A DNA stretch of 64,000 bases from Hormiphora californensis (Eukaryota; Animalia; Ctenophora), in contig CM035360.1 of NCBI GenBank assembly GCA_020137815.1, positions 620,001-684,000 on the forward strand, given 5' to 3'. This document shows, piece after piece, positions 13,001 through 18,189 of this stretch. Position 1 is the first letter of the stretch, and every line of letters begins with the position of its first letter. The notes under the pieces were generated by a model, which did no database searches, was not told the DNA's origin, and worked only from the letters and a program-made list of their open reading frames with translations. A program made the translations under genes and the position numbers.

Positions 13001-16000
13001 AGGTGTATTGAATTCTACTCCCCCTACTGCTGCTGGTGAGTGCTGCTGTGCAGTTACTTTACCTCAACATAAAAAATTCTACTGTGCACTGACATCATGT
13101 GTAGTGAGAAGTATATAGCGGTTGTAGTCACTAGTCAGAGTGTCCTTAACAAGGTCTGTGTGTAATTCACACTGAACCGGGTATGCAATAATTACACACA
13201 CACAGCCCCATAATAAACAGGTTGGCATCAGCTTGATGGGCTGACACTGACTATACCTGTACCCCCCCCCCCCCCTGATCTCTACTACTATAATAACAGT
13301 GGACTTAGAGCGGGGATATATTCCTACAGTGATTTCCAAAGAATGAACCACCCCCCCCAACAACATGATCACTGCGCTGGCAAGCGCAAAGGTTGCCATT
13401 CCCCCCCCCCCCCCCCAAAAGCGCTGCCAGAAACGCAGTTATGGGTTTGTATAATACCCTATTCTAACCTTCCCGTGGCTATATAACAGTCATTATGAGC
13501 CCCTTCACGATGCCGCATTCCTTGTTATTGTAGGGCTCCAAGAGGTTTTACATGTTACTAGGAGTTAGGACGCCAAATTGTCATTGGATATTAGTTGTCT
13601 GTTGGTTCAATGTGTTCAATGTGGTCAAGAGAGACACAGAGTGGTCAAGAGAGACACAGAGTGGTCAAGAGAGACACAGAGTGAGAACAAAATGAGATAG
13701 AGAAGAGAGACACAGAGTGAGAACAGAATGAGAGAGAAGAGGGCCAGCGCGACACAGAATGAGAGAGAAAGAGAAGAGGGCTCGACACAGGATGAGAGAG
13801 AAAGAGAAGAGGGCTCGGCAGAAAATGAGTTGGGTACACAGCCCAGAAGAGAGAAGAAAAAGAGAAGAGGGACAGAGAAAGAGATCTCACTGTTACGCAA
13901 TAGTACCACCTCCCCCTCCCCCCTGGAACAATGTAATCGTTCTTCATACATTTTATATTTTATTTTTCAAGGCCTCGAGAGAATTTAATATAATCTTTGG
14001 AGGGAGAGAGAGAGAGAGAAAGAGAGAGAGAGAGAGAGAGAGAGAGAGAGAGAGAGAGAGAGAGAGAGAGAGAGAGAGAGCGCGCGAGAGAGGGCACAAG
14101 TCTGAATGCTAATCTATAGTTTAGACTAAACATGGTAAGACCCCTCAAACATCAGCGAACTGGGTGACAGGTGTTTATATCGTGAACCAACATGATATAT
14201 ATGTGTTTCTCGTGAATCTACAAATATACTGTCAATCAGATCTTATCCATGTACAGGGTGTCCCACTGTCTTTGTATGTATGACAGAATATATACCGTAT
14301 CTGAGCTGAGCTGAAGTGCATTGACTCATTGGTTATGAAATAACCCCTCGCGACCAAAGCGACTCAGCGGGTAAGTTACTCAATCCCCCCTACCACTATA
14401 ATAATAATAGCTTTGCCATCCACCAGGCAGCATTTTATAGAGTTCTATTGTATCGAAGGTATTTTGCCTACAAATGGTCATCCTTGTATTGTATTGTTGT
14501 GTGTGGAGCTTTAATGGCTATAGCACGATCAAAGTAAGAGAGTGAAAGAAACTATCATGTTATTAGAAACATCTCTTTAATACCATTTTACTAGATCTGT
14601 TCGAGTGAAAGAAGCCATTTTACTAGATCTGTTCGAGTGAAAGAAGCCATTTTACTAGAGCTGGTAGCCTCACTATCGATCAATTAGCGATTAGACACAC
14701 ACAGCTAACTCTCACACTTTGTAACTTTTCAACATACAGAATATAGGTGTACCTACATGCATACTGACAGACAGCTACAGATGTTATGACAGACAGATCT
14801 GTACTGACAGACAGATGTACTTACAGATATTATATCTAGGTAGGTTTATTCAATATCTAGGTTTCTTACCCCTGAGATATCCTCTTTTGACACTTCCCTC
14901 TCCTCAGGTAGGATGTCGGACTTATTTGCCAGCACTATCATGTCCACATCCTCGTGAGAGTTCTAGTCGGGGAGGGATCACTTTATTATTAGAAGTGTTA
15001 TAGAAATCACTTTGTTACTAGAAATGTTATAATCGATAAATCACTTTATTAGATAATAGATGTGTTAAAATCGATAGCACAACAATTTGACAGAAATAAA
15101 TCCTTGCTACTTGCCTTACTGGGCCGGCAAGTGGTAAAATAAAAAGAAAGGGTCCATCAAAGTAAAACGATAATGGTCGCCCTAGAGCCAGATCAAAGAA
15201 ATTGTACTAAAACTTTTAGGAGGAAAGTTAAGAAATATCTTTCCTCCCGGCAACACGAGCAAACTGACACACACACACACACACACACAGACAGACAGAC
15301 AGACACACACACACACACACACACACTGTGTAGACATCTTACATCGATGATGTTCTGGAGCCACATCCTGATGTTAAGAAATGACTGTTGATCATCCAAT
15401 GCAAATACCATCACGATACCCTGCAGGGGGTAACAGCTTGTAATAATAAATACAAGGGAAGAACAGGACACAGGTATTATAGGGGATGCCGAGGATGGGA
15501 GGTTATGTTGTTGGTGGGGGTCCCTGCAGGGAATAACAGGTGTAGTTTAAATAGTACATAACTCCCTCCCGCGCGGGCATCTATTCAATAGACGCACTGC
15601 AGAGCAGTGCGTCTATTGAGCTGTAATGCACGGGTCCCGAAGGGACCCGTGCGTTACAGCCCTGTAAATCCCGAGCGTCAGCGAGGGGTTTACAGGTATA
15701 TCTGCCTGCAAGGGAGGGAGTTGTGTTCTATAGACCCCGCTGGCGGTCACCTAGAAGCAAAACAAGCACAATTTACGCGGTTCTCAAACAGAGAGCTCAC
15801 ACAAAACGGGTCAAAAAGTTGGAAATGAAGCTACAGAGTGTCTCTCTACATTCCTACACACTCGTAGCAATCGTTTTAACAATTCAAAAGGGTGGAATGT
15901 AGAGAGAGATAACCGTTAATTGTGGGTCAAGAGGAACAGTTGCCAACAGACTGGCGGGCGCCAAATCTAGACAGAGAGCGTAGTTGGTTGTACACACACT

Positions 16001-18189
16001 CCCTCTTGTGTTGTCATGTCATTTTATCGTGTTTCCAGTGATTCTTTGTGATCTTTACACAAATCTGTCAGAGGGCGTGCGTCTATCGAGACACAAACTC
16101 ACGGCAGTGCACGGCCCAATAGACCAGTGCAAATTGTTTGAGCGCGCCGTGCGTCTATTTCAGCCAGCGGGGTCTATAATAAAAGGGACGTACTGGTATA
16201 TACCCTGCTAACTTAAATAACCCGCCAGTGGCGAGAAGTCCCACTGGCGCGCTCTCAATATACAGCCAGTCCAGCGGCAGATTATTTCCCACTGGCTGGC
16301 TGTTTATTATTAACTCCTATGTTACATTCAAAGTGTGTGTAAATGATCAGTTCTTACTGAAATACAGATAGTAGAGTCGATAACTACATCGACCTCTCCC
16401 AATTGTTCCAGTTTTTGTCACATCAGTTTGGAGCCTCGACACGACCTCTAAACAGGTGTTACTTTTTCACAAACTGTTTTCATCTTGGTGTAATCAGCAG
16501 TTGAAATGTTGTTGATCATAACAAAAACCTGACTAAATTTTTTCAACTTGGGGTAAAACCATGGGTGTCAAAAGTTAGCTCTAGGTCCCCTGAGTAACCA
16601 TCCGGAGACTCCAAGAGATATTTCAAGCCGTTCTCCTGTAATCATTAATCCCGGTAGAGCACATATTTGAGTATGGACGTACGTGCAATTGCCTACAACC
16701 TCAACTTTAATGTATAACGTTAATGTGCGTCTCTCTCTTTTCTCCCCCTTGAGAAAGAGTTATCTCGCGCGGCGCAACCGCACGTGCGGTTTTTCCAGAG
16801 AGAGAGAGAGACATACAATAACATGTAAACAGCCTGCCAGCGCTCACGTACGTCCGCATTGTATTTTTTTCTCCACCGGGATTAATGATTACGGGAGAAC
16901 GGCTTGAAATATCTCTTAGAGTCTCCGGATGGTTACTCAGGGGACCTAGAGCTAACTTTTGACACCCATGGTTTTACCCCAAGTTGAAAAAATTTAGTCA
17001 GGTTTTTGTTATGATCAGCAACATTTCAACTGCTGATTACACCAAGATGAAAACAGTTTGTGAAAAAGTAACACCTGTTTAGAGGTCGTGTCGAGGCTCC
17101 AAACAGATGTGACAAAAACTGGAACAATTGGGAGAGGTCGATGTAGTTATCGACTCTACTAAGAGGGAACACTGTTTGCAAGAGTTACACACTGCATTGG
17201 AGAGAAAGAAACAACACATTCCGTCAATTTCTCTCTCTTTATCTCCCCTTTTGTTTCACTATCTCAATTCCTCTGTGTTATGTCTGGCATGCCCCATATC
17301 TTAATATTTCTTTCTCTCTCTCCTTAGTAACTGTTACCAAACAATATACACTCAATTGAGAGATGTTTTTGACTGTTTCTCAGTTCTCTTTGTGTGTTTT
17401 GATTAGTGTTTTCTCTCTTGTTAGTGTGTAATACTTGAAACAAACAACTAAAGCAGGGTATATAACCCATAAACTCTGACCAATGGCACGTTATTGGTTT
17501 AAACCCCTCCGCCTCTCCCTCGGCTCCGCCTCGGGATCGTCGTCGTGATTTAAACCAGTTTATCCGCCACTGGCGGATAAACTACAGCTACCTTCTCCCG
17601 GCGGCGCGCTGGGAGAAAGGTATCTGAAATAACGTGCCAGTGGCCAGAGTTTATGCCTCATATAACCTGCATTTAAGTGAAATGGATGAACTAATTAACC
17701 AGTTAGAAACATGTGGTAACATGTGGCTTATTAAAAGAGAAAGGGATCCAATTAGATAAAAAACACTCACATCAGCACCCCTATAATAAGGTTTTGTAAT
17801 GGTATGAAATCGTTCCTGACCAGCTGTATCCCAGATCTGCATCTTCACTTTCTTGTTACTGACAGTCACCGTCTTTATTTTGAAATCAATACCTGCCCGG
17901 GATTAACAGGTCATTAGGAGGGATTAAACAAAGATGCTAATTTTTCTCAGTATACTAATTGTTGTTGTTGTGGTGCTAGCATGAAACATGCCGGCGGTGC
18001 CGTGACATGATGACAAGGCAACCTGTAACACCACCTTGTAACACCTACCAATAGTAGTCACCTACCGATTGTTGTCATGAAGGAAGGTGTAAATTCATTG
18101 TCCACGAATCTGACAAGGACTGCGGTTTTCCCCACCCCGCTGTCTCCTATCAACATCAACCGTACTAGATGGTCATACTTTTTTGCCAT
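10006..18189 (-). CDS. Rab GTPase, Rab8/Rab10 (Sec4/RabE) clade, 203 aa, 7 exons (copy A, complete)
   Basis: Exons 18066-18189, 17771-17892, 15343-15420, 14870-14962, 11703-11768, 11483-11542 and 10006-10074 total 612 nt, all GT-AG and in phase. Motifs: [22 protein letters not shown] (G1), TTIGIDF (G2), WDTAGQERF (G3), YYRGA, ANKSD (G4), ETSAK (G5), and C-terminal SSGCC (geranylgeranylation). Confidence 0.95.
10940..11007. mobile_element. Degenerate short Tc1/mariner-type MITE (CAGTCGGAC.. TIR)
   Basis: Imperfect TIRs CAGTCGGACGCCGATATA ... TAAATCGGGGTCCGGCTA. Confidence 0.5.
12097..12510. repeat. C-rich (CCACCC/CCTCCA) low-complexity tract in Rab intron 4
   Basis: Degenerate CCACCCC repeats; G-rich on the transcribed (-) strand. 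Confidence 0.85.
15551..16178. mobile_element. Non-coding insertion E1 with a three-hairpin cap and an internal sequence complementary to both termini
   Basis: Absent at the paralogous site (23771-23800). Left end ATAGTACATAACTCCCTCCC and right end GCCAGCGGGGTCTATA are both complementary to the contiguous internal segment GGGAGGGAGTTGTGTTCTATAGACCCCGCTGGC (~15712-15744). Confidence 0.75.
16197..17664. mobile_element. Non-coding insertion E2, same architecture as E1 in mirror orientation, with TATA direct repeats
   Basis: Empty site GTACTGGTATAACCTGC in unit B. TATA at 16197-16200 and 17661-17664. Internal AGCAGGGTATATAACCCATAAACTCTG (~17452-17478) is complementary to both ends. Hairpin cap at 17461-17664. 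Confidence 0.75.
16371..17159. mobile_element. Foldback MITE (~285-bp inverted arms, TA-flanked) nested in E2
   Basis: GTAGAGTCGATAACTACATCG... and ...CGATGTAGTTATCGACTCTAC form near-perfect arms, with TA on both sides. Confidence 0.85.

What the first reader, a model, noticed from the sequence alone, without database searches (positions are those of the whole stretch)
15551..17664. Two unrelated insertions share a self-splinting architecture: internal complement of the joined ends plus a three-hairpin cap
Seen: E1 (15551-16178) and E2 (16197-17664) lie ~20 bp apart in Rab intron 2. Both are absent from the paralogous intron in unit B, and they show no evident primary similarity. Joining right end to left end gives a junction (E1: GCCAGCGGGGTC-TATA-GTACATAACTCCCTCCC; E2: CAGAGTTTATGCCTCA-TATA-TACCCTGCT) whose reverse complement occurs internally as one block centred on TATA (~15712-15744; ~17452-17478, with a few mismatches). 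The 180-200 nt between that block and the near end folds into a long stem closed by three hairpins (E1: AATAGACGCACTGC, GCTGTAATGCACGGGTCCC-GAA, CCTGTAAATCCC; E2: GGTTTAAA, AGTTTATCCGCC-ACT, CAGCTACCTTCTCCC). There are no conventional TIRs, and only TATA/AATA terminal repeats. Established: DIRS retroelements use an internal complementary region to splint their ends into a circle, and tyrosine-recombinase elements (DIRS, Crypton) integrate via short core repeats. Inference: these are non-autonomous elements mobilised through a single-stranded circular or dumbbell intermediate with a conserved four-way junction. They may be unclassified families or Crypton/DIRS derivatives.
Basis: partly seen in the sequence, partly recalled or inferred. 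Interest (0 to 1): 0.85.

Follow-up and report, generated by a model that had tools for sequence, protein, structure and literature searches.

The report
Hairpin-capped miniature Crypton transposons
Two short mobile elements in an intron of a comb-jelly-like genome are gene-less passengers of Crypton transposons, which move by a tyrosine recombinase, and they share a conserved folded end structure that makes the poorly understood Crypton mechanism directly testable.

Summary
E1 (15552-16178, + strand) and E2 (16197-17660, - strand) are real dispersed families: E1 has about 124 copies and E2 at least 559 first-look candidates.

Each has constant ends and no terminal inverted repeats. Each has a 180-200 nt cap that folds into a stem closed by three hairpins. 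Beside the cap lies an internal block, centred on TATA, that complements both termini.

Three corrections:
- E2 carries a nested, unrelated 793-bp foldback element.
- The two families are related at their termini.
- The joined ends are 2 nt longer than the internal block.

Both families insert immediately 3' of TA(T/C/A)A, without target duplication, and end in their own invariant TATA.

The decisive result is that each family has a protein-coding partner. Two are about 2.4 kb; the third was only partly read. These partners carry the same cap, and for E1 and a third family E3 also the same far end, around one ORF for a Crypton-type (DUF3504) tyrosine recombinase. That ORF has a Cre-like predicted fold and conserved catalytic Arg/His/Tyr.

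My initial Helitron-like reading was rejected. That the folded architecture builds the recombination site on single-stranded DNA, as in integron attC or CTX phage, is plausible but unproven.

This is a new structural variant of a known class.

The parts
15548..15551 (+). Target tetranucleotide TAAA immediately 5' of E1. It is host DNA and is not duplicated.
   Evidence: In 31 E1 copies the 5' flank reads T29 A30 (T22/C6/A3) A30. The paralogous empty site is shown.
15552..16178 (+). E1, a 627-nt non-autonomous Crypton-derived element (TAGTACATAAC ... GCGGGGTCTATA).
   Evidence: More than 40 full-length copies at 94-98% identity. There are 124 genomic hits to its first 18 nt against 1 for the control. 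Its first 203 nt and last 109 nt flank a tyrosine-recombinase ORF in L090.
15552..15728 (+). E1 cap: a basal stem (15552-15584 with 15698-15728) closed by three hairpins, forming a four-way junction.
   Evidence: Inverted repeats I3, I6 and I9. DNA fold -74.8 kcal/mol, z = -16.
15729..15732 (+). Internal TATA between the cap stem and the body stem.
   Evidence: Invariant in 31 copies. It lies at the junction of the two closing stems in the whole-element fold.
15733..15744 (+). Internal 12-nt repeat GACCCCGCTGGC, complementary to the far terminus.
   Evidence: 16/16 complementary to 16163-16178, TATA included (I10). Invariant in the copies.
15745..16162 (+). E1 body. It is non-coding and carries two further GTGCGTCTAT motifs near its end (16077, 16149).
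   Evidence: Direct-repeat family D3. Only E1's first 203 nt and last 109 nt match the recombinase-coding partner.
16163..16178 (+). E1 far terminus: 12-nt repeat GCCAGCGGGGTC plus the element's own invariant TATA.
   Evidence: The terminal TATA is invariant in 31/31 copies, while the 5'-flank tetranucleotide varies.
16197..17660 (-). E2, a 668-nt non-autonomous Crypton-derived element in the opposite orientation (TGAGGCATAAAC ... AGCAGGGTATATA on the - strand), interrupted by a nested element.
   Evidence: 559 first-look candidates at 98-99% identity. Constant ends in 21 copies. Its internal block and cap lie downstream of a third recombinase paralogue at 93% identity.
17661..17664 (-). Target TATA of E2 (host DNA).
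   Evidence: The empty paralogous site contains a single TATA, gtactggTATAacctgc.
17465..17660 (-). E2 cap: a basal stem closed by three hairpins.
   Evidence: DNA fold -67.3 kcal/mol, z = -12.1. Two compensatory pair changes among copies.
17452..17464 (-). E2 internal block: TATA (17461-17464) plus a 9-nt repeat (17452-17460) complementary to the far terminus.
   Evidence: 13/13 complementary to 16197-16209 (I23). It closes the body domain in the whole-element fold.
16197..16209 (-). E2 far terminus: its own TATA (16197-16200) plus the 9-nt repeat.
   Evidence: The terminal TATA is invariant in 20/21 copies.
16369..17161 (.). Nested, unrelated 793-bp foldback TIR element with 3-bp TSD AGA (16366-16368 and 17162-17164). 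It is not part of the Crypton architecture.
   Evidence: 317-nt arms at 96% complementarity (I1). Uninterrupted E2 copies and 3-bp TSDs at 14 other insertions. 911 first-look candidates.
23770..23812 (+). Paralogous empty site for both insertions.

Best explanation
E1 and E2 are non-autonomous derivatives of Crypton DNA transposons of the animal CryptonA/DUF3504 type. They are probably mobilised in trans by tyrosine recombinases encoded in partner elements elsewhere in the genome. The two fully read partners are about 2.4 kb, and each partner carries the corresponding family's terminal modules.

Shown:
- The element enters the chromosome in one orientation, immediately 3' of a TA(T/C/A)A tetranucleotide.
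- No bases are gained or lost at the target.
- The element ends in its own invariant TATA, so insertions look flanked by a short direct repeat. This is the Crypton hallmark.

Inferred:
- The element leaves as a circle whose joined ends read ...GGT(C/A)-TATA|T(A/G)(G/A)...
- The recombinase exchanges strands at a single fixed position after TATA.

Inferred, less certain:
- The internal block that complements both termini, together with the three-hairpin cap, lets one strand fold so that the two termini sit side by side on an internal splint.
- This would build a duplex recombination site with a G.G.T(A/C) arm on each side of TATA. Integron attC sites and the CTX-phage attP(+) are built this way from folded single strands and are resolved by replication.
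For: Partners:
- A DUF3504 search of the genome hit C10:2074999-2075412, 740 bp from an orphan E1 hairpin.
- In L090, E1 positions 4-203 (96%) and 519-627 (93.6%) flank one 461-aa ORF on the opposite strand. It is the only ORF of 150 aa or more between the termini.

ORF identity:
- Pfam DUF3504 E 6.6e-6, below Pfam's own cut-off (26.7 against 29.7 bits), and Phage_integrase E 0.002.
- Its homologues carry PF12012 and, for two of the four, PF00589.
- A profile of the family hits QRICH1 at 6e-22 and a XerC-like recombinase at 3e-4 in the PDB.
- The predicted fold matches Cre at E 2e-8.
- R240, R371, H394 and Y403 are invariant.

Other families:
- A 57%-identical paralogue on C3 sits in a 2.35-kb element. 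Its cap and far end are 98.5% and 95% identical to a 665-nt family E3.
- A 36% paralogue on C5 is followed by E2's internal block and cap at 93%.

Insertion:
- There is no TSD. E1 lies inside an E2-type copy at GATTTAAA|CCAG with nothing duplicated. Paralogous empty sites agree.
- The target tetranucleotide varies only on the 5' side: 11 copies vary on that side alone, 1 on both sides, none on the other side alone.
- The position before the target tetranucleotide mimics each family's own end: C in 12/31 E1 targets against 0/21 E2 targets.

Structure:
- Three families have unrelated stem sequences but the same cap plus internal complement.
- Two compensatory pair changes occur in the E2 cap, with 17/500 shuffles reaching that value.
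Against: - No circle or single-stranded form was observed. The joined-end junction found in a metagenome contig also exists as chromosomal tandem dimers.
- The E1-type partner lacks the first 5 nt of the cap end and is single-copy. Trans-mobilisation is therefore inferred, not shown.
- In this recombinase and its two closest homologues, the first His of the classic R-H-R-Y tetrad is Arg.
- Within-family variation is low. The distal part of the 12-nt repeat in E1 drifts without compensation.
- The far end of the E2 partner could not be fetched.
Confidence: 0.8

Rival explanations
1. Same Crypton elements, but with canonical double-stranded chemistry. A double-stranded circle recombines with the target through its joined ends. 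The cap and internal complement then serve another purpose, such as cruciform extrusion in a small supercoiled circle, an origin or accessory-protein site, or a by-product of palindrome-templated repair.
For: This is the model proposed for Cryptons by Goodwin et al., as summarised in PMC3212892. The internal block in plain duplex form is itself a near-palindrome (GTGTTC-TATA-GACCCC). Palindrome-templated changes do occur in the cap: a loop inversion and a quasipalindrome correction.
Against: With two staggered strand exchanges and random segregation, a variant base inside the overlap should appear as often at one junction as at the other. The observed split is 11:0, plus one copy with both. 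Outside TA.A the targets share no homology with the element. Three families keep the complementarity while their stem sequences differ.
Confidence: 0.35
2. Non-autonomous Helitron-like elements of the HLE2 (Helentron/Helitron2, HINE/DINE-1-like) type, moved by a RepHel HUH nuclease through rolling-circle transposition.
For: The layout is the same as described for HLE2: a 12-16-nt terminal repeat, its partner followed by a terminal stem-loop, no TSD, orientation-specific insertion and tandem arrays (PMC4067079, PMC11417382). Intact RepHel ORFs carrying the HLE2 marker DUF6570 exist in this genome.
Against: The two RepHel loci examined have single-copy flanks and no similarity to E1 or E2. The insertion site is TA(T/C/A)A, not T|T. 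All three families pair with tyrosine-recombinase ORFs, and no RepHel ORF lies within the E1/E3 termini.
Confidence: 0.04
3. DIRS-like retroelement derivatives, in which the internal complementary region splints a cDNA into a circle.
For: Geometrically, the internal block complementary to both ends resembles the DIRS1 internal complementary region. Integration leaves no TSD.
Against: The partners are 2.35-2.4 kb with a single recombinase ORF and no RT or RNase H. There are no inverted terminal repeats. The recombinase is of the DUF3504 type, which per PMC3212892 matches Cryptons and not DIRS/Ngaro.
Confidence: 0.02
4. Each 'element' is two adjacent, independent TA-targeting MITEs (a cap MITE and a body MITE), so the complement of the joined ends is a trivial consequence of two pairs of TIRs.
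For: Cap and body are each bounded by inverted repeats and by TATA. This was my first reading.
Against: Cap and body always move as one unit with constant outer ends. There is no TA duplication. In the same data the nested foldback element shows clean 3-bp TSDs, so duplications would have been seen. The arrangement recurs in three families and in their coding partners.
Confidence: 0.01

Closest known systems
[quoted passage not shown] Crypton-N1_SSa, CryptonA-N2_SSa, Eulor5/6; PMC3212892, PMC5753468)
   Same: There is a single tyrosine-recombinase ORF. There are no TIRs, LTRs or true TSDs. A short direct repeat of constant sequence (here TATA) lies at both ends. Non-autonomous copies share only the termini with the coding element.
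   Different: The literature I could read describes Cryptons as having no structural feature other than the short repeat, and as low in copy number (PMC8969392, PMC12130899, PMC13465315). Here three families share a 180-200-nt three-hairpin cap plus an internal complement of both termini. The non-autonomous forms reach hundreds of young copies. The host appears to be a ctenophore.
Integron attC sites and the CTX-phage attP(+) (bacterial tyrosine recombinases acting on folded single strands; from my own knowledge)
   Same: A recombination site is assembled by intrastrand pairing of two inverted segments. The crossover point is fixed, and resolution does not need homology across an overlap. These are 'works like' features only.
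   Different: Those systems are bacterial and use IntI or XerCD, and their folded sites are 60-150 nt. No single-stranded form has been shown here, and the enzyme is a eukaryotic Crypton recombinase.
DIRS1 internal complementary region
   Same: An internal segment is complementary to the two outer ends of the element and could hold them together.
   Different: DIRS elements are retroelements with RT/RNase H, long inverted terminal repeats and a different recombinase clade. None of these is present here.
HLE2 (Helentron/Helitron2) elements and HINE/DINE-1
   Same: The layout is a short terminal repeat, its partner, then a terminal stem-loop. There is no TSD, and tandem arrays occur.
   Different: Those elements use a RepHel HUH nuclease, insert at T|T, and have short stem-loops. 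Here the partners encode a tyrosine recombinase.

Membership tests
Crypton (CryptonA / DUF3504 type) | The autonomous element encodes a tyrosine recombinase and no RT or DDE transposase. | tested here: met
   L090 has one ORF of 461 aa between the E1 termini. Pfam DUF3504 E 6.6e-6 (26.7 bits, below the 29.7-bit cut-off) and Phage_integrase E 0.002. PDB profile: QRICH1 6e-22, XerC-like 3e-4. Predicted fold matches Cre at 2e-8.
Crypton (CryptonA / DUF3504 type) | Catalytic R-H-R-Y residues are present. | tested here: inconclusive
   R240, R371, H394 and Y403 are invariant in 5 sequences. The first His position is Arg in this protein and its two closest homologues. Activity was not tested.
Crypton (CryptonA / DUF3504 type) | No TIRs or LTRs; a short direct repeat of constant sequence at both termini. 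| tested here: met
   The termini are not inverted repeats of each other. TA(T/C/A)A lies on one side and an invariant TATA on the other in 52 copies.
Crypton (CryptonA / DUF3504 type) | No target-site duplication. | tested here: met
   The filled site in L014 compared with five empty E2 copies shows no base gained or lost. The paralogous empty site in the window agrees.
Crypton (CryptonA / DUF3504 type) | Non-autonomous copies share termini with the recombinase-coding element. | tested here: met
   E1/L090: 96% and 93.6%. E3 with the C3 element: 98.5% and 95%. E2 cap with the C5 element: 93%. The far end of the E2 partner was not fetched.
Crypton (CryptonA / DUF3504 type) | Extrachromosomal circular intermediate. 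| not testable with these tools
   Only assembled contigs were available. The head-to-tail junctions seen also exist as chromosomal tandems.
DIRS retroelements | RT/RNase H together with the recombinase; inverted terminal repeats plus an internal complementary region. | tested here: not met
   The partners are 2.35-2.4 kb with a single recombinase ORF. There are no ITRs. Only the internal-complement geometry is shared.
HLE2 / Helentron non-autonomous elements (HINE) | Termini shared with a RepHel-coding element; insertion between T and T. | tested here: not met
   RepHel loci have single-copy flanks without similarity to E1 or E2. The target is TA(T/C/A)A.
Tc1/mariner-type MITEs | Terminal inverted repeats and a TA duplication. 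| tested here: not met
Folded single-strand recombination sites (integron attC / CTX attP(+)); 'works like' only | The recombinase acts on one folded strand, with a single strand exchange resolved by replication. | not testable with these tools
   Indirect support only: the fixed crossover point with an 11:0 junction asymmetry, and the folds.

The most novel reading that the evidence does not exclude
A lineage of eukaryotic Cryptons assembles its recombination site by folding a single DNA strand. The two termini would be held on an internal complement next to a three-hairpin cap. The element would insert by one strand exchange at a fixed position after TATA and be completed by replication. That would make it a eukaryotic counterpart of integron cassettes and CTX phage, and the first defined cis-acting structure for Cryptons.
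Probability: 0.35. Interest if true: 0.9.

Novelty: new variant of a known kind. Interest (0 to 1): 0.72.

Why it matters
Cryptons are the least understood class of eukaryotic DNA transposons. In the papers I could read they have no recognised structural signature beyond a 4-6-bp repeat. They are called low in copy number and hard to classify without the coding copy, and their mechanism rests on analogy.

This locus offers several things at once:
- Three matched pairs of a coding partner and a high-copy, very young miniature derivative.
- A precisely defined insertion rule.
- A conserved folded module that could be mutated and tested.

If the module is the recombination site, it would give annotators a structural search key for non-coding Crypton relics. 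It would define a minimal cis element plus a 461-aa recombinase for experiments. It might also show that recombination of folded single strands by tyrosine recombinases is not confined to bacteria.

If the module has another role, the finding remains a well-characterised new Crypton lineage in what appears to be a ctenophore.

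Tried and rejected
1. Two adjacent TA-targeting MITEs. This was my first reading. I rejected it because cap and body amplify as one unit and there is no TSD.

2. HLE2/Helentron-like rolling-circle elements. I held this through on layout and on the presence of DUF6570 RepHel ORFs. I rejected it after two RepHel loci showed single-copy flanks and the recombinase partners were found.

3. Longer E1 copies as autonomous forms. Pairing 5' and 3' end hits gave copies of 0.9-3 kb. The four fetched were E1 with nested insertions and no ORF of note. 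The real partner escaped this search because its first 5 nt are missing.

4. Replitron, IS200/IS605-like and parvovirus-like rolling-hairpin readings.
   - Replitrons have direct terminal repeats.
   - The hairpin-2 loop is inverted in only 3-4 of about 50 copies, not the 1:1 ratio expected of flip-flop replication.

5. Rfam returned nothing relevant.

6. Laying public contigs on the region gave only paralogue or empty-site joints, the expected skip of the nested element, and one E2 head-to-tail junction. No raw reads were available, so circles could not be assessed.

7. A structural scan of all held sequence for TATA-X10...X10'-TATA mainly found foldback elements.

   - The metagenome relatives L094 and L095 were too short to show ends.
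   - As a result, the far end of the E2 partner and further copies could not be read.

Full report
**What is in the window**

In E1:
- The left end (15551-15584) pairs with 15698-15731.
- The adjacent 15729-15744 pairs 16/16 with the right end, 16163-16178.

In E2:
- 16197-16209 pairs 13/13 with 17452-17464.
- 17450-17495 pairs with 17628-17673.

Each cap folds as single-stranded DNA into a long basal stem closed by three hairpins (z = -16.0 and -12.1; no shuffle of 200 folds as well). When a whole E1, or an uninterrupted E2 copy (L064), is folded, the minimum-energy and centroid structures are the same. There is a cap domain, and directly beside it a stem in which the internal TATA plus repeat pairs with the far terminus and encloses the body.

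The paralogous intron at 23770-23812 lacks both insertions.

**They are real families with constant ends**

- A search of the window's own genome (110.7 Mb) found more than 40 full-length E1 copies at 94-98% identity.
- The first 18 nt of E1 occur 124 times, against once for the control pattern. The last 24 nt occur 90 times.
- E2 proved to be a 668-nt unit with 559 first-look candidates at 98-99% identity.
- In the window, E2 is interrupted by an unrelated 793-bp foldback element (16369-17161). That element is extremely abundant and makes clean 3-bp target duplications.
- Head-to-tail tandem dimers exist for both families.
- The interiors of E1 and E2 are unrelated. The 30 nt at the TATA end are 22/30 identical (0 of 2000 shuffles reach this). 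The cap ends share CATAA(A)C.

**Insertion rule**

I align copies in the cap-first orientation, which puts E1 on the + strand and E2 on the - strand.
- The 5' flank reads T-A-(T/C/A)-A in 31 E1 copies and 21 E2 copies.
- The element's last four bases are an invariant TATA: 31/31 in E1 and 20/21 in E2.

One E1 copy sits inside an E2-type element. Five uninterrupted E2 copies read GATTTAAACCAG at that point. The filled site reads GATTTAAA, then E1, then CCAG. Nothing is duplicated or lost. The window's own empty site agrees.

Variant target tetranucleotides (TACA, TAAA, TTTA) appear at the 5' junction alone in 11 copies, at both junctions in one, and at the other junction alone in none. The crossover therefore lies at one fixed position, immediately after the target tetranucleotide.

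The base before the tetranucleotide tends to copy each family's own end. It is C in 12/31 E1 targets (E1's own end is GTC-TATA) and in 0/21 E2 targets (E2's own end is GTA-TATA). This explains the tandem dimers, and also why these elements are often found abutting one another.

**A wrong turn**

The layout is a short terminal repeat, then its partner, then a terminal stem-loop. Together with the absence of a TSD and the tandem copies, it matches published descriptions of Helentron/Helitron2 (HLE2) elements and their HINE/DINE-1 derivatives (PMC4067079, PMC11417382, PMC5148889).

The genome also holds intact RepHel ORFs with the HLE2 marker DUF6570, and I held this reading for a long time. It failed on two counts:
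- The two RepHel loci I could examine have single-copy flanks with no similarity to E1 or E2.
- Longer copies bounded by E1 ends were merely E1 with nested insertions.

**The coding partners**

A search of the genome for DUF3504, the Pfam family derived from Crypton tyrosine recombinases (PMC3212892), gave five hits. One lies 740 bp from an orphan E1 hairpin seen.

The E1 partner (L090):
- E1 positions 4-203 (cap, internal TATA and internal repeat; 96%) and 519-627 (93.6%) bracket 2.1 kb.
- That 2.1 kb holds a (GA)n tract and a single 461-aa ORF on the opposite strand.

The protein:
- It matches DUF3504 (E 6.6e-6, 26.7 bits, just under Pfam's 29.7-bit cut-off) and weakly Phage_integrase.
- All four of its database relatives carry PF12012, and the two more distant ones also PF00589.
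- A profile of the family hits the Crypton-derived QRICH1 at 6e-22 and a XerC-like recombinase at 3e-4 among solved structures.
- The predicted fold (mean pLDDT 67) matches Cre recombinase at E 2e-8.
- R240, R371, H394 and Y403 are invariant. The first His of the classic tetrad is Arg in this protein and its two closest homologues.

The other two partners:
- The genome holds one such gene, a 57%-identical paralogue on C3, and a 36% paralogue on C5.
- The C3 gene lies in a 2.35-kb element whose cap end starts with the same 11 nt as E1. Its cap and far end are 98.5% and 95% identical to a 665-nt non-coding family, E3, which I found abutting an E1 copy in L026.
- The E3 cap again folds into a stem closed by three hairpins (z = -14.1).
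- The C5 gene is followed by a (CT)n tract and then by E2's internal block and cap at 93% identity.

All three families thus pair with a recombinase-coding element of the same terminal design. For the E2 partner, only one end could be read.

**Classification**

These are Cryptons and their non-autonomous derivatives. The defining features are met:
- They encode only a tyrosine recombinase.
- They have no TIRs or LTRs.
- They make no TSD.
- A short direct repeat of constant sequence lies at both ends.

DIRS is excluded: there is no RT, there are no ITRs, and the recombinase clade is different.

**Mechanism**

Shown:
- Insertion is orientation-specific and leaves no TSD.
- It occurs at a fixed point after TA(T/C/A)A.
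- The termini are shared with recombinase-coding copies.
- Three families conserve the fold while their stem sequences differ.
- Two compensatory pair changes occur within the E2 cap: C:G to T:A in the basal stem and C:G to A:T in hairpin 1. Only 17 of 500 shuffles reach this value, and none of the slid controls shows a double change.

Inferred: excision as a circle, and recombination of its joined ends with the target, as proposed for Cryptons in general (PMC3212892).

My preferred reading of the architecture is that one strand folds so that both termini lie on the internal block.
- This gives a duplex with a G.G.T(A/C) arm on either side of TATA in all three families (read directly).
- That is the usual geometry of a tyrosine-recombinase site.
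- A single strand exchange on such a folded substrate, completed by replication, is how integron cassettes and CTX phage integrate (from my own knowledge).
- It would explain the fixed crossover and the 11:0 junction asymmetry.
- Two staggered exchanges on duplex DNA with random segregation would not explain them.

This remains an inference. I give it roughly one chance in three, with the double-stranded alternative about as likely.

Evidence that the hairpins do form in vivo is modest:
- A three-base loop inversion occurs in 3-4 of about 50 E1 copies.
- A three-substitution change extends the basal stem by four pairs.
- The low frequency of the loop inversion argues against parvovirus-like rolling-hairpin replication.

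**Novelty**

The papers I could read say that Cryptons have no distinguishing structure beyond the short terminal repeat and are usually low in copy number (PMC8969392, PMC12130899, PMC13465315). Non-autonomous Cryptons are known in Repbase (PMC5753468).

I found no description of a conserved cap plus internal complement. I could not search Repbase or Dfam, so priority is not established.

The organism is coded. Genome size, the number of large scaffolds and its presence in marine metagenomes suggest a ctenophore.

**Limits**

- The only public reads available were assembled contigs.
- Two metagenome relatives were too short to show their ends.

Noticed in passing
window 16369-17161: A 793-bp foldback TIR element (317-nt arms) is nested in E2 with a 3-bp TSD AGA. 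There are 911 first-look candidates in the genome at 99-100% identity, so the family is very young and very abundant.
   Followed up: partly
L061-L082 (right flanks of E2 copies): Downstream of E2 insertions, positions +7 to +9 read TAA in 14-19 of 21 copies. The target looks bipartite (TATA, 4-5 nt, then W-R-TAA). E1 shows only a weak A at +8. Unexplained.
   Followed up: no
L024:1417-3572 and L025:1186-3301: A kilobase-size foldback element has arms built of arrays of an 11-nt unit TATAGACGCAT. E1 has inserted into it twice, each time after GCGTCTATA. E1 itself carries four GTGCGTCTAT motifs, so this motif may be a recombinase binding or target site.
   Followed up: partly
L083:3-144 and L024:2542-2683: A 142-nt palindromic MITE (ends CCCTACTAAAATATAG...) is 99% identical at two unrelated loci.
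   Followed up: no
L083:2379 to L084:1303 (C10:3948378-3957302): An intact 2975-aa RepHel ORF (DUF6570, Helitron_like_N, PIF1, Ulp1 C48 protease) of the HLE2 type has single-copy flanks. About 14 further Helitron_like_N hits carry long open frames elsewhere in the genome.
   Followed up: partly
window 28050-28689 and 52256-52896: Two copies of a foldback MITE of about 640 nt with near-perfect arms.
   Followed up: no
L008, L012, L013 (E1 hairpin 2); E1 positions 30-35: The loop GAA of E1 hairpin 2 is inverted to TTC in 3-4 of about 50 copies. A subfamily changes TCTATT to GATAAT, which adds four base pairs to the basal stem. Both look like palindrome-templated mutations.
   Followed up: partly
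L093 (reverse complement) 601-700: Directly after the terminal TATA of the E2-type coding partner, another block of three GC-rich hairpins begins. It may be the cap of a fourth family.
   Followed up: no
L090:2440-2592; L092:680-760; L093 (reverse complement) 200-345: All three recombinase-coding partners carry a long (GA)n/(CT)n microsatellite. In two it lies between the ORF and the internal block. In the third it lies upstream of the ORF.
   Followed up: no
L026:839-1503: A 665-nt non-autonomous family E3 and an E1 copy lie tail to tail and share a single TATA. The palindromic TATA end of one element thus serves as the target for another on the opposite strand.
   Followed up: partly
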